A stretch of 64,000 nucleotides of DNA from Macrostomum hystrix (GCA_950097015.1 CATNEN010000029.1:930001-994000); one strand, 5' to 3'; positions 5,455-38,683 are shown, numbered from the stretch's first letter. Notes: generated by a model not told the origin, from the letters alone. Numbers and translations: made by a program.

Positions 5455-6020
5455 AAGTCATCGGTCATGGGGTGGGTGCTCATCTGAGAGTCATGGGTCA
5501 TGCGGTGGGCGCTCATCTGAGTCTCATAGGTCATTGCGTGGGTGCTCATCTGAGAGTGATGGGTCCTGGGGTGGGTGCTCATCTGAGAGTCATGGGTCAT
5601 GGGGTGGGTGCTCATTTGTAAGTCATTTTTCATGGGGTGGGTGCTCATCTGACAGTCATGGGTCATGGTAGTGGGTGCTCATTTTTTAGTCATGTTTAAT
5701 GGGGTGGGTGCTCATCTGAGACTCATAGGTCATGGGGTGGGTGCTCATCTGAGAGTCATGGGTCATGGGTTGGGTGCTCATCTGTCAGTCATGAGTCATT
5801 GGGTGGGTGCTCATCTGAGAGTCATGGGTCATGGGGTGGGTGCTTATCTGTCAGTCATGAGTCATTGGGTGGGCGCTCATCTGTCAGTCATGAGTCATGG
5901 GGTGGGCGCTCATCTGTCAGTCATGAGTCATGGGGTGGGCGCTCATCTGTCAGTCATGAGTCATGGGGTGGGCGCTCATCTGTCAGTCATGAGTCATGGG
6001 GTGGGTGCTCATCTGAGATT
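5455..6020. repeat. Minisatellite, 33-bp unit (GGGGTGGGTGCTCATCTGAGAGTCATGGGTCAT)
   Basis: Tandem repetition; explains ORFs 5445-5666, 5665-6099 and 5799-6110. Confidence 0.93.
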
Positions 6021-6806: not shown

Positions 6807-6909
6807 ATGTCTGCGAACGGACTAAACCGACTTGAGGACAGGTTTCGCTTGGCGCTTGCCGGCCTCGGCGACATGCTGGCGAGATCCGACTGTGAGAACT
6901 GCGGTCTGC

Positions 6910-6960
<51 letters not shown>

Positions 6961-6984
6961 CTGTCTGTCTGTCCGTCTGTCTGT

Positions 6985-7019
<35 letters not shown>

Positions 7020-7080
7020 CCTGTCTGTCTGTCTGTCTGGCTGGTTGGCTGGCTGGCTGCCTGTCTGTCTGTCTGTCTGT

Positions 7081-7111
<31 letters not shown>

Positions 7112-10100
7112 CCTGTCTGTCTGTCTGTCTGGCTGGCTGGCTGGCTGGCTGGCTGCCTGTCTGTCCGTCTGTCTGTCTGTCCGTCTGTCTGTCTGGCTGG
7201 CTGGCTGGCTGCCTGTCTGGCTGGCTGGCTGTCAATACATCTATCAATATAAATCAATTTATCTATCAATCTATCTGTCTATCAATCTATCTGTCTATCA
7301 ATCTATCTGTCTATCAATCTATCTGTCTATCAATCTATATGTCTATCAATCTATCTGTCTATCAATCTATATGTCTATCAATCTATCTGTCTATCAATCT
7401 ATCTGTCTATCAATCTATCTGTCTATCAATCTATCTGTCTATCAATCTATCTGTCTATCAATCTATCTGTCTATCAATCTATCTGTCTATCAATCTATAT
7501 GTCTATCAATCTATCTGTCTATCAATCTATATGTCTATCAATCTATCTGTCTATCAATCTATCTGTCTATCAATCTATCTGTCTATCAATCTATCTGTCT
7601 ATCAATCTATATGTCTATCAATCTATCTGTCTATCAATCTATCTGTCTATCAATCTATCTGTCTATCAATCTATCTGTCTATCAATCTATCTGTCTATCA
7701 ATCTATCTGTCTATCAATCTATTTGTCTATCAATCTATCTGTCTATCAATCTATCTGTCTATCAATCTATCTGTCAATCAGTCTTCCTAGTGAGCAGATA
7801 GAAATCACGTCTAGCAATTGGGGCCGAATGCAGAGCCACTGCTCCATCCGCAGCCGTCGCATTCAAAAGCGGCGTGCAGCTGGCTGTTCAGTCCGTGGAC
7901 TGGGCGGCTACCATTTTATAGCTGGTTGTTAATTATGTTCCAGGGGCTACAGACACCCTTGAAATGTATCTATCTAAATAACTTAAATCATTCTTCCTCT
8001 TTCCTTCCGTTTGCCTTCCCATCACTGAACTACCTGAAGTGGAGTTAACTTTTCATAAGAACTAGTCTAGATATATTCTTCTTCACTTCCGTTTACAGCA
8101 ACAAAAATATCAGATTCCCAAATTTAATCAACTATGAAGGAAATTCAGAAATTCAGTAGGGCTGCTAAATTTCCTGAGGGTGCTCTCGACGAAAATTTCG
8201 CTACTTTAATTTCAATATGCAATTTCCTCACAATTGCCTTTGCAGCCCGGCGGCGGCAGTTCGCCAGTCCAGCCTCTGTACTGCGCGGACCTCGAAAATC
8301 GATCGATGGCCGTCGCGACGGTCCGATCGGGCGGATCTTGGAGGACCTGGTGCACTTCAACAACAACCTGACGCCGACTGCCAAGGACCCCGCCGTCTGG
8401 TGGTGCCCGCCAGCTGCTGAAATTGCGGCAGAGGCCGGAGCTTCGTCAGCCGCCGGCGTTTGCGTCACCTTCGGCGAGCTCAACGGTCGAGCCAATTTTT
8501 TGGCACGCTGTCTGCAACGAGTTCTACGCGCTCACGGCGTCGTCGAAGACGACGAGTTCAGCGGTGTCACCATTTGCGCCGTCATGCCGAGCTGCCCGGA
8601 CCGGCTCGCCCTGGAGCTTGCGGCGCTGAAGCTCGGCCTGCCGCTGCTGGGCCTTGAAGAACCCGACGGAAGTCTTGGCCGGCTGTTGGACGCCCTGCAG
8701 AAGACAGCAGCTCCGTCGGCTGCATCTGGCACATCAGCGACTGTCGTGCTGGTGACATCGGCCGGAGCCGCGTTGCGCCTGCCAGATCTCCGCTGCCTGT
8801 CGCCGTCGTTGGCGCTGCAGTTCGAGGACCTCGCCGAGGCCGGCCAAGCTCTCGGCCTGTCCGACCGCGATCTTCAGGACGACGAGAGGCCGGCTGCCGT
8901 CCAAGACGCAGACTCCGCGTCGCTAGCGGTAGCCTTCACCGTGGAGACACTCGGCGGCCGTCTGGTTAACGTGACTCAAGGCCAGCTGCTGGCTGCCGTA
9001 GGCTTCCTGCGCGACTGCGTGCCCTGGCAGTGCCACGAGGTCCTGTGGCTCGGCGACTCCTGCGACAGCGTTTATTGGCGGGTGCACGCGCTGAGCGCCC
9101 TGCTGCAGGGCATCCCCCTGCTGCTCTGCCCCGGCTGTGCACGCTGGGATGCCTGGCTGGGGCTGCTGCGATCTCAGTGAGTGCTGGGGCTGCAGTGATT
9201 TCAGTGAGTGCTGGGGCTGCAGTGATTTCAGTGAGTGCTGGGGCTGCAGTGATTTCAGTGAGTGCTGGGGCTGCAGTGATTTCAGTGAGTACTGGGGCTT
9301 CAGTGATTTCAGTGAGTGCTGGGGCTGCAGTGATTTCAGTGAGTGCTGGGGCTGCAGTGATTTCAGTGAGTGCTGGGGCTGCAGTGATTTCAGTGAGTGC
9401 TGGGGCTGCAGTGATTTCAGTGAGTGCTGGGGCTGCTGCGATCTCAGTGGGTGCTGGGGCTGGTGGAGCTGGGATCACTTTCATGCTATTAAATCGAGCT
9501 TTCAGTCCACCTCACCAACCACCTGATCCATCTCAGTTATGTCACTCGACTGGTGACCAGTCCGAGCTTCCTGACGGACCTACTGGCTCACACCGGCAGC
9601 CGGCCTGCCGCTCGGGCCCAGCTGGCCTCCGTTGAAGCCGTCCTGGTGATCGGCGAGCCGCTGCCACCGCGCATCGCCGACGACTTCTTCCACCAGCTGG
9701 GCTCCGGCCGCACCCTCGGCTGCTTCTACGGCTGCGTGGAAGCCTGCGGCGCCGCCGCCTACGGCCTGTTCCGCTGTCCGGCCGATGTACAGGAGGCGCG
9801 GCGACTGTCCGACTGCTTGCTGGCGCTACCGGAGGCGGCCCCGAATGTCCGCCTGGCCGTTACGGACCAGCGGGGCCGGCCGCTGCCTGCCGGTCAGCTG
9901 GGCGAGATCCGGCTCCTCCTGCCGGGCAGTCACGCCTCTTGCGACGTAGCCGACGACGGCGCTACCTGGACTGCTGGCCCGTCGGCGCTTCGGACTGGCG
10001 ACTTCGGCCAGCTGACGGACGGCCGCCTGTTGTGCTACGGCCGCGCCGATCCGTCAATGACGGCCGCCGTTGAAGCGGCAGCCAGGCTGGGCTGGCGAGT

Positions 10101-12131
10101 GCGGATGACGCCTAGCGGGACGCGGCTCCTGGCTCAGCCGGCGTCGGCCGAATGTCGGCGATTCACAACTGCGCCACTGATGCGCTGTCTTGAAATGGCA
10201 ACCGACTGTACAGGTGTGGACCGCCTCCGACCTCCCCAAACTTCTTCAACCTTCACAATTTCCGCTCCCAGCCTTAAAAACACCATTCTCCCATTCTCCC
10301 GCCTTGTCCACAGTCGGGTTGCTCGCCGACTGGTCCTCGATGCCTCGCCGACGCCTCTGGGAGCTGCCCGACCCGAGTTCGGTGCGGCGGCCCACTTTGC
10401 TTGACGTCGATTCCGAAAATGGCGGCGGCCGCAGCAGGGACAGCGGCAGCGCAGAGGCTGTTGAAAATAATGGCGACGGTGTCGAAGCCTGGCCGGCCGC
10501 TGCGCTTCGACTCGCCGAAGCGGCCACCGCCGGACGCTCCGCTTGTGCCGGCCGAATGAGTCGCATGCTGAGCTGCGCCGAGCCTTCAGGAGGTGGCAAA
10601 ATTGTTCAGTCTGCCTGGGAGAGCCACCTGCCCTACACGGAGGCCGCGTATAGGACGGAGGGGCCGGAAATCAGCGGCGGCGGCATCGGCAGCCTCCGCC
10701 TGCTGGACCGTTCGGGCCGGGTCGCAGCTCTGGTGGAATTCCGAGTCATTGAGTCCGGCATCGTCGGAGCGGCGGCCGAAGCCGCAGACATTGGCTTCGA
10801 TGCGGCGGCCTGTTCAACGGCGCTGAACAGCGAATTGTCGGCCACTGACGAAACCACTGACGACGGCGCCATTCGAATTTGTCGAGCTCTAAGAGTTCGA
10901 TTTCCTCAGTGCGGCGGCGGCGGTGCAAGCGGCGGCACCAGAGCGCTACGCTTTCTGCGTCTGGCGGATCTGGTGGAGAATCTGCTGCTTCACTGTGCCC
11001 AGCTGCTCGGCTGCGGCGCGGCGCTTCGGGTGGCTGACGACAGCATTACTCAGGTGCGCATTGTAGGGCCAGCCGTGGCGTTTACTAAGTACTGTGTACT
11101 GAGCCTGTGTACTCTGTGTGCTGTGTACTGTACTTTACTGTGTACTATGTACTGTACTGTGTACTGTACTGTACTTTAATTTACGCTTCTAGAGTGCACT
11201 GTACAGTGTTTTATGTTTATACTATAAAATCTTTGGATCTAGGATCGATTCTTAAAGCTCAAATCAATGACTCTACACGCACTGATTGTTAACGAAATTC
11301 ACAGTGTGCTTTACTTTCTTAATTTAGATCGCATGCGCTGGTTTAGTTCAGACTTCAAAATGCTCCCAGAAGGAATCATTTTATTTGTTAATCCACCAAG
11401 CTCTGAAGGGCAGTAAGCTAAAGCACCCGGGGAGACTCGACTAGACAAGGCGGAAGAGAGAAAAAATGAAGACTAGTTTTCGCGTGCCCCAGCCCTGAGC
11501 TGTCTTTCAACTCATGTTGAGAATAGTAATTCTCTGTCCCTGTGAATAGTAACAATGCTGGGCCTAAAAATAACTTTCTTTTGTCTGCTATAAGCTCCTT
11601 GGCCTTACTGACCTAATATGTACTTTTTTTCTTTTTTTAAGGTTTTTTTTTAATGTGTCCATAAGCCAGTCACTTAATTCCTAATTTTCCAATATACCGA
11701 GTTGTCAAATGGTTGCCAGTATCAACTAGGGGTAGAAATTCAGCTTTGGTGTCCATGGACTGAACAGTTGCACAAGTTGTACACCATCCAACCAGGCCCT
11801 CTGCCAGGAGCTCGGCTATCGACTGGCTTCAACCCGGCAGGCGGTGCAATCGAACGGCCTGGACGTCAACGGCAGTTTCGGTCGCGGCGGCGGCAGCCGG
11901 AGCAGCGCCAGTAGTCGCAGCAGCAGCGTCAGCAGCAGCAGCGGGGGCGGCGGCAGCGGCGGCAGCGGAAGCGGAGGCGGCAGTCGCGGCCGAGGCCAGG
12001 CTTGGGAGTCGGCGACGGTGTCGGAGGTGCACGCCCTGTGCCGCAGCCAATCAGCGGTGCTGATGATCCGCCGGGTGCCTCCGCTGCCGGCCGAGGCCCG
12101 ACAATCGGAGAAATCGGCTCTCGAAATCTGA
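6807..12131 (+). CDS. ebony: Ebony / metazoan NRPS-like protein (adenylation-like domain plus AANAT-like C-terminal domain) with degenerate catalytic motifs, ~922 aa
   Basis: Predicted exons 6807-6891, 8246-9176, 9537-10213, 10314-11053 and 11796-12131. All introns are GT-AG, phases are compatible and the total is 2769 nt with no internal stop. Ebony-like segments in the right order: SVLRGP, TFGELNGRANFLAR, GEPLPPRIADDFF, FYGCVEA, RTGDFGQLTDGRLLCYGRAD, LVENLLLHCAQ...DSITQ (cf. Ebony FMEHEVLRVARE...SPLTQ), ELGY. Confidence 0.8.
6909..7775. repeat. Compound microsatellite (CTGT)n/(CTGG)n followed by a 16-bp unit (CTATCTGTCTATCAAT), in intron 1 of the Ebony-like gene
   Basis: Direct repetition; the long ORFs here are artefacts. 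Confidence 0.95.
9177..9460. repeat. 27-bp minisatellite (GTGAGTGCTGGGGCTGCAGTGATTTCA) starting at the intron 2 donor
   Basis: About 10 tandem units, each containing GTGAGT. Confidence 0.92.
11093..11175. repeat. (TGTAC)n degenerate microsatellite
   Basis: Direct repetition in the last intron of the Ebony-like gene. Confidence 0.85.
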
Positions 12132-12825: not shown

Positions 12826-13082
<257 letters not shown>

Positions 13083-24047: not shown

Positions 24048-27000
24048 ATGGAGACCAAGATACAAAAAGAAAATGCTTCTTGCGAAACAAATCTATTAGA
24101 TAATCTACTTTCCCTGAAAGGGAGGGCAACACTTCTTCTTTGTGGAGGTAAGAACATTTGAATGAAATATATATTTGTAATGTGTATTTATAGAGTTAAA
24201 GCTCTTGCTTTTTGCCACATTTGAGCAAATGCCACGATTTCCTTCCAATTAGAAAAATAAGACCAATGTATTATAATTAAAACTATAATATAAATGTACA
24301 ATGATTTTCTATTTCAGAAAACATAGAAGTGTAATATTACTCTTTCTTGAATGTAGTTAAAAATATAATCTGTAACCCTGTTGTTTAACCTACTAGTGCT
24401 ATTAAAGAGCCTAACGAAATGAAAAAATTCAATATGATTTTTGGTAAAGGCAATATTTTATTACTTTTAAAACTTTGTTTATTCGTTTTTTTACATTGTT
24501 CTAAAATTGTATCATCCTTTTTGGGTTGGTATTTGGTACTTGATACTTGGTATTGCTTGATACAACCTAGACTAATAGTCAATTGATAAGTACCACACCA
24601 TTGTAGGCTCAAAATTTAGGTCACTTTATAAAAGTCACTAGATTACTGTTAATTAGCAAAAAATAATTATATCAGTAACAAACTCTGTGAGGCACGACTT
24701 TGTTGATTGGTTTGTGTCATAGTTATATTGTAGAAATAAAGTCTTATTTTATACTACTCAAGTACTTTAAAAAGACATGGATTACATTGTACCTGTAGTT
24801 CCCAAAACATAGCAATAAAGTTCTAGACATATAAATATATATATTATACTTCGACTTTTCATATGAGTGTTGTATACATTGACATGTCTTTTTATATATA
24901 TATAACTAAAGCCAGCTTAAACTAAAAATTAAACTGCCAAACTCTAAATGTTAATAATTTTAGGTCTCGCTGGCTGCCTTGCAAAAACAACAGTTGCCCC
25001 ATTGGACAGGGTGAAGATTCTATTGCAGACACACAATAAAGCTCACGAGTCACATGGTAAGTTCTTAGATAGCTATCTTACTATCATGTTTCAGTTAGCT
25101 AGATTGTTAGTAGACTAACTACACTGAAAATGTTTCATATTTTTACTTCTTAGTTTTTGTAGTGTCCTAAAATAGTTTCTTTATACATTCTCAGGAATAT
25201 TTTCCACGCTGCGCCATGTCTGGTCAGTTGAGGGCCTTTCTGGCCTCTATCGCAGCAATGGAGCTCAGATGATTAGAATATTTCCATACTCAGCAATACA
25301 ATTCTTTTCATTCGATGTCTACAATACTGTAAGTTGAAAACTCGTGCATTGTTATGAATTGCAATGATAGTCTAATAATATAAATACTAGTGAAAAAGAC
25401 TTTTTCGGTATGCTTACTGCTTACTTATTATTTTAATTTTCTTTTCAGAATCTGTCTGCCTCGCTTGGTGGCGGAGACTTGACAAGATTAATCAGTGGGT
25501 CTATGGCCGGTAAGTTGACAGCGAACTTTGGTAGGCCTAGTAATCTAGGTTTTACTACCTCCAGTCTTTTAGTTTTTTTAAAATTCTCAAATCAGTTAGC
25601 CTTCTCTGCCAGATCCTCAAATCAGTTCTCTCCCAGATCCTCAAATCCGTTAGCCTTCACTCCCAGATCCTCAAATCCGTTAGCCTTCACTCCCAGATCC
25701 TCAAATCCGTTAGCCTTAACTCCCAGATCCTCAAATCCGTTAGCCCTCTCTCCCATATCCTCAAATCCGTTAGCCTTCACTCCCAGATCCTCAAATCAGT
25801 TAGACTTCTCTCCCATATCCTCAAATCCGTTAGCCTTCTCTCCCAGATCCTCAAATCCGTTAGCCTTCACTCCCAGATCCTCAAATCAGTTAGACTTCTC
25901 TCCCATATCCTCAAATCCGTTAGCCTTCTCTCCCAGATCCTCAAATCCGTTAGCCTTCACTCCAAGATCCTTAAATCCGTTAGCCTTCTCTCCCAGATCC
26001 TCAAATCCGTTAGCCTTCACTCCCAGATCCTCAAATCCGTTAGCCTTCACTCCCAGATCCTTAAATCCGTTAGCCTTCTCTCCCAGATCCTCAAATCCGT
26101 TAGCCTTCACTCCCAGATCCTTAAATCCGTTAGCCTTCACTCCCAGATCCTTAAATCCGTTAACCCTCTCTCCCAGATCCTGAAATCAGTTAGCCCTCTC
26201 TCCCAGATCCTCAAATCCGTTAGCCTTCACTCACAGATCCTCAAATCCGTTAGCCTTCACTCCCAGATCCTCAAATCCGTTAGCCTTCACTCCTAGATCT
26301 TCAAATCTGTTAGCTTTTACTCCCAGATCCTCAAATCGGTTAGCCCTCTTTCCCAGATCCTGAAATCTGTTAGCCTTCTCTCTCAGATCCTCAAATCCGT
26401 TAGCCTTCTCTCCTAGATCCGCAAATCAGTTGAGTTGTTTCTTCGAAGATAGATGTGTTATTAATTTGCAGTCTTTTCATCGCGGTGCGAGCAATTGCTC
26501 ACATACCTTTGCCTTTCATCGAAGGAATGACAGCCGTCACTCTCACATATCCGCTGGATGTTGTACGGACCCGCCTCGCTTACCAATCGGCCTCTTCACC
26601 GGCAGCCGTCGCCAATTATTCTGGCATCGCCGACTGCCTGCGCCACCTCCGGACCCAGCGAGCTCTGTACGCCGGCCTGGGCCCAAGTTTGGCCGGCATG
26701 GCGCCCTACGCCGGCGTCAGCTTCAGCGCCTATCATTGGCTTCAACGCCAGGCTGTCGAACGCTGGCCCGGCCTGTTCGCCAGCGTCGGCTCGGAGGACG
26801 AGCCGTCCCGGCTGCGCGCCTGGGCTCGGCCGCTGATTGGCGGCCTGGCCGGTGCCGCAGCTCAGACTGTGAGCTACCCACTAGACTGCGCTCGGCGCTC
26901 TATGCAGGTGGGTCTGTGTTCATCTTGATTAATTGGATCACAACCTCACCTGTCATCATCACAGCCTTACCTGTCATCATCACAGCCTCACCTGTCATCA

Positions 27001-27368
27001 TCACAGCCTTACCTGTCATCACCACAGCCTCACCTGTCATCATCACAGCCTCACCTGTCATCATCACAGCCTCACCTGTCATCATCACAGCCTCACCTGT
27101 CATCATCACGGCCTCACCTGTCATCATCACAGCCTCACATTATCTCCAATTTCTTCCACAGGTGGCAGGCGCACCCGGTAATCTAAACCTGGCCGCGGGA
27201 TCGTCGGCGCCTGCAGGAGCCGCGGCCACCCTGTCACAATTGTACAGCCGCTACGGCGTGGTGTCCGGCCTCTATAGAGGTCTGTCGTTAAACTACCTGC
27301 GCGTGGTGCCCACCGCCGGAGTATCATTTGCCGCCTACGAAACTCTGCGCCAGGCGTTTGGAGTGTGA
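24048..27368 (+). CDS. SLC25A16: Mitochondrial carrier SLC25A16 (Graves disease carrier, putative CoA transporter), ~325 aa
   Basis: Predicted exons 24048-24147 (least certain), 24964-25056, 25195-25328, 25449-25509, 26525-26907 and 27162-27368, totalling 978 nt in frame. There are three PxD/ExxK/R carrier signatures (PLDRVK, PLDVVR, PLDCAR), plus AKTTVAPLDRVKILLQ, MIRIFPYSAIQF and GLYRGLSLNYLR, which match SLC25A16. Confidence 0.88.
25600..26425. repeat. 30-bp minisatellite (TCCCAGATCCTCAAATCCGTTAGCCTTCAC) in an SLC25A16 intron
   Basis: About 27 tandem units. Confidence 0.95.
26940..27140. repeat. 21-bp minisatellite (CCTGTCATCATCACAGCCTCA) in the last SLC25A16 intron
   Basis: About 9 tandem units. 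Confidence 0.92.
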
Positions 27369-36733: not shown

Positions 36734-38683
36734 CTAGATCAGGGTCTCCCGGGCGATTGGCGAGTGCGAACTGTCGCCGTAGTAGCGCCGAACAATGCGA
36801 GGTCGAAAGCCGGCCCCGAAATCGGCCGCTGCCGCGACGTCACTCGCGCCGCCAGCCTCGCAGAAGCTGCTCTCGGCGTAGCGCTTGCCGACTCGCCTGA
36901 CTCGACCAGAGGCCGACACGCATCTTTCGCAGCCGTTGCAGCCGAAGCCGATGTGGTATGGCGGAGGCTGCGCAGCCTGGTGAAGCGGCGGAGGTGGCGG
37001 CGGCGGCGGCGACGGCGGCTGTTCAGTCACCATGGCCTGGTGTTGTCGCACCAGCAGCGGCTGCTGCGCACTCGTCGAAGGAAGCGACGGCATCATTGTT
37101 GACGCTCCTGCGGCGAACTGCGGCAACAGCGGCGATGGAGGAGTTACGGGTCGCCGCCATTGCTGCTGCTGCTGCTGCTGATGTTGAAGCTGCGTTGTCT
37201 TGCGGCGCATCGGCGGCTGTCCCGAGTTCGAGCGATGATGACGCGGACATCGCTGGGAATGTTGCTTTTCCTGCTGCTGCTTCTGGCGATTGCGGCGGCG
37301 GCGCCGACCAGCGCTAGGGGTCTCGTTGGCCTCATGGCCAGCCTGCTCCAATTCCCTGACTTCGTTCTCATCTTCCTCCTCGTCTTCGACATTCTCGTCC
37401 TCTTCGTCCGCGTCCTCCTCCGGCTCGGCTGGCTCCTCCTGCTTGGTGGCGCCGCCGCTGCGTCTGCGCCGACGCCCAACGTCGCAATAGTCGACGCGAG
37501 CCCGCTGCAGACTGGCCCGCTGCTTCTGGGTGGCGATACGCAGCAGGATTACGTCACACAGCATGGAGGACAGGCCGAACAGGGCCAGGCCGCTGCCCAG
37601 ATTCATCGACAAGCTGTAGAAGTTGAACCGACCGCCTTCCCCGCTGACGGTGACGAAGATCTTGATGCCGTAGGCGTGCACCAGCATTCGACGGTCCTGG
37701 CTCTCGCTGCGATAATTGTAGGCGTACTGCACCGAGAAGCCCTCGATGTCGGTGCCCTTGCCGGTGTCGAGCTCGCGGAAGTGGTACTGCGGCAAGCAGC
37801 GCTCCTCGGACAGGTCGAAGTTGCACTGCCAGGAGATGTCGATGCCGAAGGCGCCGCCTATTTTGTATACCTCCTCGCTTGTCGTGCCGGCGTAGGCGAG
37901 GATGTCGCCGAGGCGGAACACCGGGCAATAGGTGAGGTTGGGGTGCGACTGGTCATACAGGCAGGTGTTGAGGTACTCGCTTGTCATCCAGTCCAAAATG
38001 TTGCGCCGCTTCTTGTCGAACGCTCGAAAATCAACGCTGTTCTTCAGCTGAACGGTGAAGTTGCGGGCCCTGCTGAGCACGGAGCCCACCGGCAGGTTGA
38101 AGGCGTCCTGACTTGGCGCCGGGCACCAGCCGTAGCTCACGCAGGTCTGCGTCTCCAGGTTGCAACGGCCGGTGCGTCGGCCGTGGCTGCTGATGCTGCC
38201 GGCTGGGCAGTCGGTGTCCCGGTCGCAGTGGCCCGTAGACTCCGGGCACTCGCTCATGGCCTGCCGGTCAGTCACCCGGGCGTTGGTGGTGATGAAGATG
38301 GCGCCGTTCATGATTGGCGGAATGATGTAGTCGGCCGAGTCCCATACTCTGGCCCCGTAGTCGGGATCGTCTGTTCGGTTCACAAAGTCCAGGCCCTTGA
38401 CCTTAAACACCACGCCACCCTCTGGCGTCTCCTTCACCTGGTAGCCCTTCTTGTGCCAGATGATGTAGAATAGAAAGTACACAATTACGGACAGCTGAAC
38501 GCCGCGGTAGAACAGGCCGAACTTGACGCTGCGAATCACCACCACCTTCTGCAGGCGGTACTCGAAAAAGCCGGCCAGCATGCGGCTGAAGAACGGCCTC
38601 AGGGAGCACATCTCCTTGCTGGCTGGCTGCTGACGAGGCGCTGGCTGATGCAACTCGCTGCCGCTCGACGATCTCAGCTTCAT
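36734..38683 (-). CDS. P2RX: P2X purinoceptor-family ion channel subunit, intronless, 649 aa with a long low-complexity C-tail
   Basis: Single ORF with FFEY..K, TM1, KGYQ, FKVKG, WDSADY, ten conserved ectodomain cysteines, NFTVQLKN, CPVFRLG, YGI and TM2 NLGSGLALFG...LCD. Confidence 0.93.
   Translation of the reverse strand: MKLRSSSGSELHQPAPRQQPASKEMCSLRPFFSRMLAGFFEYRLQKVVVIRSVKFGLFYRGVQLSVIVYFLFYIIWHKKGYQVKETPEGGVVFKVKGLDFVNRTDDPDYGARVWDSADYIIPPIMNGAIFITTNARVTDRQAMSECPESTGHCDRDTDCPAGSISSHGRRTGRCNLETQTCVSYGWCPAPSQDAFNLPVGSVLSRARNFTVQLKNSVDFRAFDKKRRNILDWMTSEYLNTCLYDQSHPNLTYCPVFRLGDILAYAGTTSEEVYKIGGAFGIDISWQCNFDLSEERCLPQYHFRELDTGKGTDIEGFSVQYAYNYRSESQDRRMLVHAYGIKIFVTVSGEGGRFNFYSLSMNLGSGLALFGLSSMLCDVILLRIATQKQRASLQRARVDYCDVGRRRRRSGGATKQEEPAEPEEDADEEDENVEDEEEDENEVRELEQAGHEANETPSAGRRRRRNRQKQQQEKQHSQRCPRHHRSNSGQPPMRRKTTQLQHQQQQQQQWRRPVTPPSPLLPQFAAGASTMMPSLPSTSAQQPLLVRQHQAMVTEQPPSPPPPPPPPLHQAAQPPPYHIGFGCNGCERCVSASGRVRRVGKRYAESSFCEAGGASDVAAAADFGAGFRPRIVRRYYGDSSHSPIARETLI

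What the first reader, a model, noticed from the sequence alone, without database searches (positions are those of the whole stretch)
6807..12131. Intact Ebony/NRPS-like gene whose catalytic machinery appears erased: candidate pseudo-NRPS or amine-binding protein
Seen: five exons splice into an uninterrupted ~922-aa ORF collinear with Ebony. The A3 P-loop (YTSGSTGxPKG) reads AFTVETLGG, and the A10 motif (NGKVDR, catalytic Lys) reads roughly DPSSVRR. No GGxSL phosphopantetheine site is present; that region reads VEAWPAAALRLAEAA. The TGD motif and the whole AANAT-like C-terminal domain are kept. Known: Drosophila Ebony and Schistosoma SmNRPS need adenylation and the carrier Ser to make beta-alanyl amines (for example the male pheromone beta-alanyl-tryptamine), and the C-terminal domain binds the amine. 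Inference: this is a catalytically dead paralog kept as an amine sensor/sequester, a regulator of an active NRPS, or a stand-alone acyltransferase. That would be an unusual layer of metazoan NRPS biology.
Basis: partly seen in the sequence, partly recalled or inferred. Interest (0 to 1): 0.8.

Follow-up and report, generated by a model that had tools for sequence, protein, structure and literature searches.

The report
Conserved dead Ebony-type NRPS in flatworm
This flatworm gene descends from the Ebony-type enzymes that couple beta-alanine to amine transmitters. It has lost the parts needed to activate and carry beta-alanine, yet it is transcribed, spliced and kept by selection, so it most likely does a different, still unknown job.

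Summary
Five exons (6807-6891, 8246-9176, 9537-10213, 10314-11053, 11796-12131) give a 922-codon open frame. Spliced transcript contigs from four runs of one study confirm three of the four junctions. The annotated Macrostomum lignano orthologue (909 aa, 58-78% identity per exon, same five-exon layout) supports the fourth.

The adenylation core groups with animal Ebony-like proteins (SH-aLRT 98) on a very long branch. In both species:
- The A3 P-loop is destroyed, including a 4-residue deletion.
- The A8 QVKIRG motif is lost.
- The A10 lysine is lost.
- The carrier GGxS serine is lost.
- RTGD and GRxD remain.

It is not a decaying pseudogene. dN/dS is 0.27 (CI 0.22-0.32) at dS 0.86, all 19 indels are in frame, and DNA similarity stops at the exon borders.

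The C-terminal domain is only weakly tied to Ebony's AANAT-like domain. The ESM Atlas model of the orthologue resembles GNATs (TM about 0.6). A profile match scores above reversed controls but is not significant. My AlphaFold models failed.

No canonical Ebony gene was found elsewhere in this 220-Mb genome, so this is the sole Ebony-clade gene here, not a paralogue of an active one. Function is inferred, not shown. The scan's notes hold no earlier report of this gene.

The parts
6807..6891 (+). Exon 1: start codon and 28 codons plus 1 nt; GTGAG donor at 6892
   Evidence: the loose end before 8246 equals 6862-6891. 78% identical to the M. lignano N-terminus.
6892..8245 (+). Intron 1, filled with microsatellites and a 16-bp tandem array (7262-7784, 32.7 copies)
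   Evidence: No DNA similarity to the M. lignano locus.
8246..9176 (+). Exon 2: N-terminal half of the adenylation core (A1-A4 region)
   Evidence: Transcript contigs start at 8246. Weak PF00501 match. Aligns with Ebony-like proteins from the N-terminal S-x-L-x-G motif onwards. 74% identical to M. lignano.
8932..8958 (+). Remnant of the A3 P-loop: AFTVETLGG followed by RLV, where Ebony-likes have YTSGSTGxPKGV; includes a 4-residue deletion
   Evidence: M. lignano has the equally degenerate AIVVESMGG.
9177..9536 (+). Intron 2; most of it is a 27-bp tandem array (9156-9462, 11.4 copies) that repeats the exon 2 end and its donor
   Evidence: No transcript depth across 9310-9460.
9537..10213 (+). 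Exon 3: second half of the adenylation core plus a shortened C-terminal subdomain
   Evidence: PF00501 5e-11, 42.5 bits, above the 29.9 cut-off. TIGR01733 1.2e-10. DltA 3e7w 5.4e-07. 70% identical to M. lignano.
9724..9750 (+). A5 remnant FYGCVEACG (canonical YGSTE): Tyr, Gly and Glu kept, Thr lost
9988..10056 (+). A7 LRTGD kept. A8 begins GRAD, but QVKIRG is replaced by PSMTAAV.
10214..10313 (+). Intron 3, 100 nt, GT..AG
   Evidence: Skipped in contigs of runs X1 and X4.
10314..11053 (+). Exon 4: A10 remnant, Gly/Ser/Asp-rich linker in place of the carrier domain, and most of the GNAT-like domain
   Evidence: No Pfam, NCBIfam or PDB sequence match.
10331..10357 (+). A10 position: WSSMPRRRL where Ebony-likes have xxGKxDRxxL; the catalytic Lys is absent
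   Evidence: M. lignano reads CSAVPRRRL.
10472..10525 (+). Carrier-domain remnant: GDGVEAW where Ebony-likes have GGNSxNA; no serine
   Evidence: M. lignano reads GGSDAW with its Ser one position off, so no serine is conserved between the two species.
10601..11053 (+). Main part of the candidate GNAT-like domain, including a conserved Gly-rich loop (10913-10954) and the helix LLLHCAQLLGCG (10982-11017)
   Evidence: Residues about 665-902 of the ESM Atlas model of the orthologue match GNATs. hhalign against the Ebony-like C-domain scores 28.5 versus 11.5 for reversed controls. The last 30-codon windows of exon 4 are 80-100% identical to M. lignano.
11054..11795 (+). Intron 4, GT..AG
   Evidence: Skipped in contigs of runs X2, X3 and X4.
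11796..12131 (+). Exon 5 coding part: end of the GNAT-like domain with a Ser/Gly-rich insert; stop TGA at 12129-12131. Transcript contigs run on to about 12186.
   Evidence: 69% identical to M. lignano.

Best explanation
This is the only Ebony-clade gene of a Macrostomum-like flatworm. It still makes a full-length protein, but it can no longer act as a nonribosomal peptide synthetase. The P-loop, the A8 motif and the A10 lysine needed for adenylation are gone. The adenylation C-terminal subdomain is shortened. The carrier domain is reduced to a linker with no phosphopantetheine serine. That much is shown.

What follows is inferred. The adenylation-domain shell is kept as a scaffold or ligand-binding module. 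It retains the A4 Asp, A5 Glu, A7 TGD and the GRxD hinge. The conserved GNAT-like C-terminal domain is the working end. It would either transfer an acyl group from a free thioester (acyl-CoA or acyl-pantetheine) or from a carrier protein supplied in trans onto an amine, or it would simply bind an amine.
For: - Gene model and transcription.
- Orthologue in M. lignano with the same five exons and the same degenerate motifs.
- Purifying selection: dN/dS is 0.27 (bootstrap CI 0.22-0.32). It is alike in the adenylation exons (0.26) and the C-terminal exons (0.28). dS is 0.86.
- All 19 indels are in frame, and nucleotide similarity is confined to the exons.
- Ebony ancestry: hhalign against an Ebony-like profile gives 98.3% probability, E 1.4e-14, from the N-terminus to GRxD. 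In an IQ-TREE analysis of 58 adenylation cores the protein sits in the animal Ebony-like clade (SH-aLRT 98) with a terminal branch of 3.25 against a median of 0.96.
- Motif losses, judged against 9-10 Ebony-like proteins in which these residues are invariant.
- GNAT-like C-terminus.
- No canonical Ebony gene in the genome.
Against: - No biochemical data exist.
- The link between the C-terminus and the Ebony C-domain is weak. hhalign probability is 6-16%. An Ebony C-domain HMM that finds 6DYM at 1e-58 does not find this locus. Pfam GNAT models do not match. AlphaFold2 models were unusable (pLDDT 34 and 40).
- The Ebony-like C-domain invariants (F..K, NTHPVT) are not clearly kept.
- The long branch makes the tree placement less certain than its support value suggests.
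- dN/dS rests on a single species pair with dS near saturation and strong GC3 bias (0.75 and 0.85).
- The absence of a canonical paralogue was tested only in this assembly, not in M. lignano.
Confidence: 0.6

Rival explanations
1. The protein is still an active adenylating or ligating enzyme. It would use non-canonical residues in place of the lost motifs and release its product without a covalent carrier, for example by direct amide formation from the acyl-adenylate.
For: The A4 Asp, A5 Tyr-Gly..Glu, A7 RTGD and GRxD hinge are kept in both species. The adenylation exons are as constrained as the rest of the gene (omega 0.26).
Against: The P-loop carries a 4-residue deletion and has lost all of T, S, G, S, T, P and K. 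The A10 Lys and the A8 QVKIRG are absent in both species, and the C-terminal subdomain is shortened. From general knowledge of the ANL superfamily, these elements are needed for adenylate formation.
Confidence: 0.08
2. The protein is not Ebony-derived. It would be a different NRPS-like or ANL protein whose C-terminal region is unrelated to Ebony's amine-selecting domain, and its place in the Ebony clade would be a long-branch artefact.
For: With exon 3 alone, bacterial NRPS modules score as well as or better than animal Ebony-likes. The terminal branch is very long and the composition deviates. The C-domain match is not significant.
Against: - With the whole core as query, single-module animal proteins score best.
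- Clade support is 98.
- Collinearity runs from the Ebony-type N-terminal S-x-L-x-G motif through the W..P-[FW] motif that follows the P-loop.
- The overall length and domain order match Ebony.
- The weak C-domain match lies at the collinear position and scores above reversed controls.
- The Atlas model is GNAT-like and counts an arthropod dopamine N-acetyltransferase-like cluster among its neighbours.
Confidence: 0.1
3. It is a transcribed pseudogene that is decaying and has no protein-level function.
For: All the catalytic signatures are lost. Low-complexity Gly/Ser/Ala stretches occur. k-mer depth in the transcript contigs is low.
Against: - A 922-codon frame is intact here and a 909-codon frame is intact in M. 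lignano, at dS 0.86.
- dN/dS is 0.27, with a CI that excludes 1.
- All 19 indels are in frame; under neutrality the chance is about 1e-9.
- Splice sites and exon borders are conserved, while the introns share no similarity.
Confidence: 0.03

Closest known systems
Ebony-type single-module NRPS: Drosophila Ebony (beta-alanyl-bioamine synthase), Schistosoma mansoni SmNRPS and planarian NRPS, which make beta-alanyl-tryptamine (PMC11214079, PMC10531068)
   Same: - Size is about 900 aa and the domain order is the same.
- The adenylation core lies in the same clade.
- It shares the N-terminal S-x-L-x-G motif and the W..P-[FW] motif that follows the P-loop.
- A GNAT-like C-terminal region sits at the collinear position.
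   Different: - The P-loop, the A8 motif and the A10 Lys are lost, and the adenylation C-terminal subdomain is shortened.
- There is no PP-binding domain and no conserved serine. Canonical Ebony-likes all match PF00550.
- The C-domain is too diverged for an HMM that finds the Ebony structure 6DYM at 1e-58.
Arylalkylamine N-acetyltransferases of the GNAT superfamily (insect Dat/AANAT, PDB 3te4, 5gif)
   Same: The ESM Atlas model of the orthologue's C-terminus superposes on GNATs, including an arthropod dopamine N-acetyltransferase-like cluster (TM by target 0.51-0.62). The Ebony-like C-domain profile itself hits Dat structures.
   Different: There is no sequence-level match to any Pfam GNAT family. 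CoA binding and catalytic residues are unverified. The domain carries a long Ser/Gly-rich insert.
The A-T-R NRPS-like gene of the same genome (G000 contig C38, about 2724500-2728000, minus strand)
   Same: It is the only other NRPS-type adenylation gene found in this genome.
   Different: It has intact AMP-binding, AMP-binding_C and PP-binding domains and a NAD_binding_4 thioester-reductase domain. Its architecture is different, and it is not an Ebony paralogue.

Membership tests
Ebony-type NRPS (A-T-AANAT-like) | Adenylation core homologous to, and grouping with, animal Ebony-like proteins | tested here: met
   hhalign gives 98.3% probability, E 1.4e-14. The tree puts the protein within or sister to the animal Ebony-like clade, SH-aLRT 98, on a long branch.
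Ebony-type NRPS (A-T-AANAT-like) | Catalytic adenylation motifs: A3 TSGSTGxPKG, A8 GRxDxQVKIRG and A10 GKxDR with its Lys | tested here: not met
   A3 reads TVETLGG with a 4-residue deletion, A8 keeps only GRAD, and A10 reads SMPRR. The M. lignano orthologue shows the same losses.
Ebony-type NRPS (A-T-AANAT-like) | Carrier (PP-binding) domain with a GGxS serine | tested here: not met
   Neither the exons nor P0001 match PF00550, whereas all seven Ebony-likes scanned do. The aligned site reads GDGV here and GGSD in M. lignano.
Ebony-type NRPS (A-T-AANAT-like) | C-terminal AANAT-like amine-selecting domain | tested here: inconclusive
   - The Atlas model of the orthologue is GNAT-like.
- A collinear hhalign match scores 28.5 (P 0.0016) against 11.5 for reversed controls.
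- There is no HMM match.
- The AlphaFold models failed, and Foldseek on them was meaningless.
Ebony-type NRPS (A-T-AANAT-like) | Beta-alanyl-amine synthase activity | not testable with these tools
   This needs biochemistry or metabolomics.
ANL superfamily (Pfam PF00501 AMP-binding) | Match above the Pfam gathering score | tested here: met
   Exon 3 scores 42.5 bits and P0001 scores 69.9 bits, against a cut-off of 29.9.
GNAT superfamily | Sequence match to a GNAT family, or the Q/RxxGxG/A CoA loop | tested here: inconclusive
   There is no Pfam match even at E 10. A conserved Gly-rich loop precedes the long helix (10913-10954), but the protein is Gly-rich in general.
Pseudogene | Disrupted frame, neutral evolution, no expression | tested here: not met

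The most novel reading that the evidence does not exclude
Macrostomid flatworms have turned their only Ebony-type NRPS into a non-adenylating protein. Its GNAT-like end would now work alone, as an acyl-CoA-dependent or trans-carrier-dependent amine N-acyltransferase or as an amine sensor. If so, the beta-alanyl-tryptamine signal that drives sexual development in planarians and schistosomes is absent or made by other means in this lineage.
Probability: 0.3. Interest if true: 0.75.

Novelty: new variant of a known kind. Interest (0 to 1): 0.6.

Why it matters
Ebony-type NRPSs are among the few animal nonribosomal peptide synthetases. In flatworms their product, beta-alanyl-tryptamine, controls female or sexual development (PMC11214079).

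Here an early-branching flatworm lineage keeps only a catalytically gutted copy, and keeps it under selection. This bears on two questions. One is when and how that signalling system arose or was lost. The other is what an adenylation-domain shell and an AANAT-like domain can do without carrier chemistry.

Macrostomum lignano carries the same gene and is, from general knowledge, a laboratory model with RNAi. The question can therefore be tested directly. A full-text search for Macrostomum together with 'nonribosomal peptide' found no paper.

Tried and rejected
The exons were searched one by one by reference, and the natural M. lignano protein P0001 served as the full-length proxy.
I asked for the part beside it, as the tool advised.
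- Pfam, NCBIfam and PDB sequence searches of exons 4 and 5 gave nothing meaningful.
- The word-index protein search with P0001 found only the two M. lignano entries. With a nemertean Ebony-like as query it returned mostly bacterial NRPS and no flatworm protein.
- AlphaFold2 on the C-terminal 410 and 255 residues with 4-row alignments gave pLDDT 34 and 40. Foldseek on the second model gave no match below E 0.4. Several GNATs appear among the weak rows, but that is not evidence.
- I did not deepen the alignment with Ebony C-domains, because the result would be circular.
- Candidate intact paralogue at C38: rejected, because its architecture is A-T-reductase.
- P0041 and P0118, considered as possible flatworm relatives, are bacterial A-T-TE type genes.
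- The joint 10936->12005 (AC..TG, only 26 letters on the shorter side) is taken as a cross-match of a GGC-rich stretch from another transcript, not as an isoform.
- I considered AASDH/ACSF4-type ancestry and rejected it on the tree and the non-propeller C-terminus. No AASDH sequence was included in the tree.
- The Izoré et al. 2019 paper on the Ebony C-domain is not held, so its catalytic residues could not be checked.
Full report
**Gene model**

The region 6807-12131 splices into five exons on the + strand:
- 6807-6891
- 8246-9176
- 9537-10213
- 10314-11053
- 11796-12131

Every intron starts with GT and ends with AG, and the phases fit. The sum is 2769 nt, which is 922 codons plus TGA.

Four public runs of one study hold 31-45% of the sampled words of the stretch. 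This is about the exonic share. Their contigs are spliced, so they are transcript assemblies:
- All four runs carry, just before 8246, 30 loose letters identical to 6862-6891. This is the exon 1|2 junction.
- Two runs skip 10214-10313.
- Three runs skip 11054-11795.
- Contigs run on to about 12186.
- The exon 2|3 junction is not bridged. Depth is zero across 9310-9460, and the orthologous protein reads straight across the junction.

The exons were used one at a time by reference.

**Organism and orthologue**

A full HMMER scan of 1.84 billion representative proteins with exon 3 gave one strong hit. This is P0001 (E 4.7e-85, 70% identity, 909 aa), a hypothetical protein of Macrostomum lignano. 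A partial second M. lignano copy, P0006, also appeared.

P0001 is collinear with all five exons, at 78, 74, 70, 58 and 69% identity. The M. lignano locus has the same five-exon layout and equivalent splice sites.

The window therefore comes from a relative of M. lignano. The assembly is 220 Mb in 42 contigs. Naming the exact species would rest on memory only.

**Is it a live gene?**

Exon-by-exon codon alignments cover 878 codons. Nei-Gojobori counting gives these values:

| Codon set | dN/dS | 95% bootstrap CI |
|---|---|---|
| All exons (dN 0.23, dS 0.86) | 0.27 | 0.22-0.32 |
| Adenylation exons 2+3 | 0.26 | 0.20-0.33 |
| C-terminal exons 4+5 | 0.28 | 0.20-0.36 |

GC3 is 0.75 here and 0.85 in M. 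lignano. That bias tends to depress dS, so the ratio is, if anything, overestimated.

All 19 internal indels between the two species are multiples of three. BLASTN similarity covers exons 2 to 5 and stops at their borders.

Together with the spliced transcripts, this rules out a decaying pseudogene.

**Ancestry**

- Exon 3 passes the Pfam AMP-binding threshold (42.5 bits). Its best match is the NRPS-type adenylation model TIGR01733.
- After the M. lignano proteins, the named animal hits are Ebony-like proteins of nemerteans, an annelid and a priapulid. Their architecture is AMP-binding, AMP-binding_C and PP-binding.
- A profile of their last 210 residues finds the solved Drosophila Ebony C-domain 6DYM at 1e-58.
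- Profile-profile comparison of the Macrostomum alignment with these Ebony-likes gives 98.3% probability. The aligned span runs from the N-terminal S-x-L-x-G motif to GRxD.
- With the whole core as query, single-module animal proteins outscore bacterial modules.
- In a tree of 58 cores, P0001 lies within or sister to a clade of 20 animal-type sequences (SH-aLRT 98). Its terminal branch is 3.25 against a median of 0.96. The long branch calls for caution, but it is also what loss of catalytic constraint would produce.

**What is lost and what is kept** (judged against residues invariant in the Ebony-likes)

| Element | Ebony-like consensus | This window | M. lignano |
|---|---|---|---|
| A3 P-loop | YTSGSTGxPKGV | FTVETLGG then RLV, with a 4-residue deletion | VVESMGG then RLV |
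| A5 | YGSTE | YGCVE | YASVE |
| A7 | RTGD | kept | kept |
| A8 | GRxDxQVKIRG | GRADPSMTAAV | GRSDPAALAAV |
| Adenylation C-terminal subdomain | full length | shortened | shortened |
| A10 | GKxDR | SMPRR, no Lys | AVPRR, no Lys |
| Carrier site | GGNSxNA | GDGVEAW, no Ser | GGSDAW, Ser one position off |

The carrier site lies in a poorly conserved Gly/Ser/Asp linker. No serine is conserved there, and nothing matches PF00550.

**C-terminal domain**

Sequence methods find nothing significant:
- No PDB match, Ebony 6DYM included.
- No Pfam GNAT match.
- The Ebony C-domain HMM does not hit this locus.

Three weaker lines of evidence agree with each other:
- The ESM Atlas holds P0001. For residues about 665-902, the nearest structural neighbours of its own model are GNAT acetyltransferases. 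TM by target is 0.5-0.62, and one neighbour is an arthropod dopamine N-acetyltransferase-like cluster.
- hhalign aligns the segment from FLRLADL to ELGYR with the helix-strand-helix core of the Ebony-like C-domain, at the collinear position. The score is 28.5 (P 0.0016) against 11.5 for reversed controls.
- This segment is the best-conserved part of exons 4-5 between the two species.

My AlphaFold2 runs on shallow alignments failed (pLDDT 34 and 40). The fold search on them is meaningless.

I rate 'AANAT-like domain kept' as plausible, not shown.

**Paralogue question**

The whole assembly was searched with six queries:
- a nemertean Ebony-like protein;
- the full-length Ebony-like profile;
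- the C-domain profile;
- TIGR01733;
- PF00501;
- PF00550.

No canonical Ebony gene turned up.

The best other NRPS-type locus is C38, at about 2724500-2728000 on the minus strand. It has AMP-binding, AMP-binding_C, PP-binding and a NAD_binding_4 reductase domain. That is an A-T-R enzyme.

This gene is therefore the sole Ebony-clade member here, not a dead paralogue sitting beside a live one. I could not test whether M. lignano has a canonical copy.

**Mechanism**

Shown: the protein cannot use the canonical route of adenylation, thioester loading and transfer.

Inferred: the adenylation shell persists as a scaffold or ligand-binding module, and the GNAT-like end is the functional part. It would take an acyl donor that no longer comes from its own carrier (acyl-CoA or acyl-pantetheine, or a carrier in trans such as that of the A-T-R enzyme), or it would only bind an amine.

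A Gly-rich loop conserved in both species precedes the long helix, where GNATs bind the CoA pyrophosphate. The whole protein is Gly-rich, so this is only a hint.

**Novelty**

Ebony-type NRPSs and their flatworm roles are known (PMC11214079, PMC10531068). A conserved, expressed Ebony-type protein stripped of adenylation and carrier chemistry was not found in the literature search or in the scan's notes.

I class it as a new variant of a known kind. It is of moderate to good interest, because the same gene exists in a tractable model flatworm.

Noticed in passing
window 36734-38683 (-): An intronless 649-aa open frame matches the P2X ATP receptor family over its whole length (PF00864, E 1.4e-99).
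   Followed up: partly
window 9156-9462: Intron 2 is mostly a 27-bp tandem array (11.4 copies, 96% matches). It repeats the last bases of exon 2 together with its CAGTGAGT donor, which creates about 11 donor-like sites spaced 9 codons apart. No transcript depth was seen across 9310-9460.
   Followed up: partly
window 6900-7790: Intron 1 consists of (CTGT)n and (GGCT)n microsatellites followed by a 16-bp unit repeated 32.7 times. Long spurious ORFs run through it on both strands.
   Followed up: no
window 10855: One run (X3) carries a 6-nt in-frame deletion in the variable acidic linker of exon 4. Other single-contig variants are 10157 G>A (Arg to Gln), 10837 G>T (Leu to Phe) and 10933 C>T (synonymous).
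   Followed up: partly
G000 C38:2724500-2728000 (-), locus L009: A multi-exon NRPS-like gene with AMP-binding, AMP-binding_C, PP-binding and NAD_binding_4 (thioester reductase) domains. A short-chain dehydrogenase gene lies just downstream (L009 2836-3393).
   Followed up: partly
window 26430-27368 (+): An open frame whose end matches the mitochondrial carrier repeat (PF00153, E 8.6e-08). It is probably one exon of a carrier gene.
   Followed up: no
window 5456-6018 and 12836-13082: A 33-bp tandem repeat (17 copies) lies upstream of the gene, and an (ACT)82 microsatellite lies downstream.
   Followed up: no
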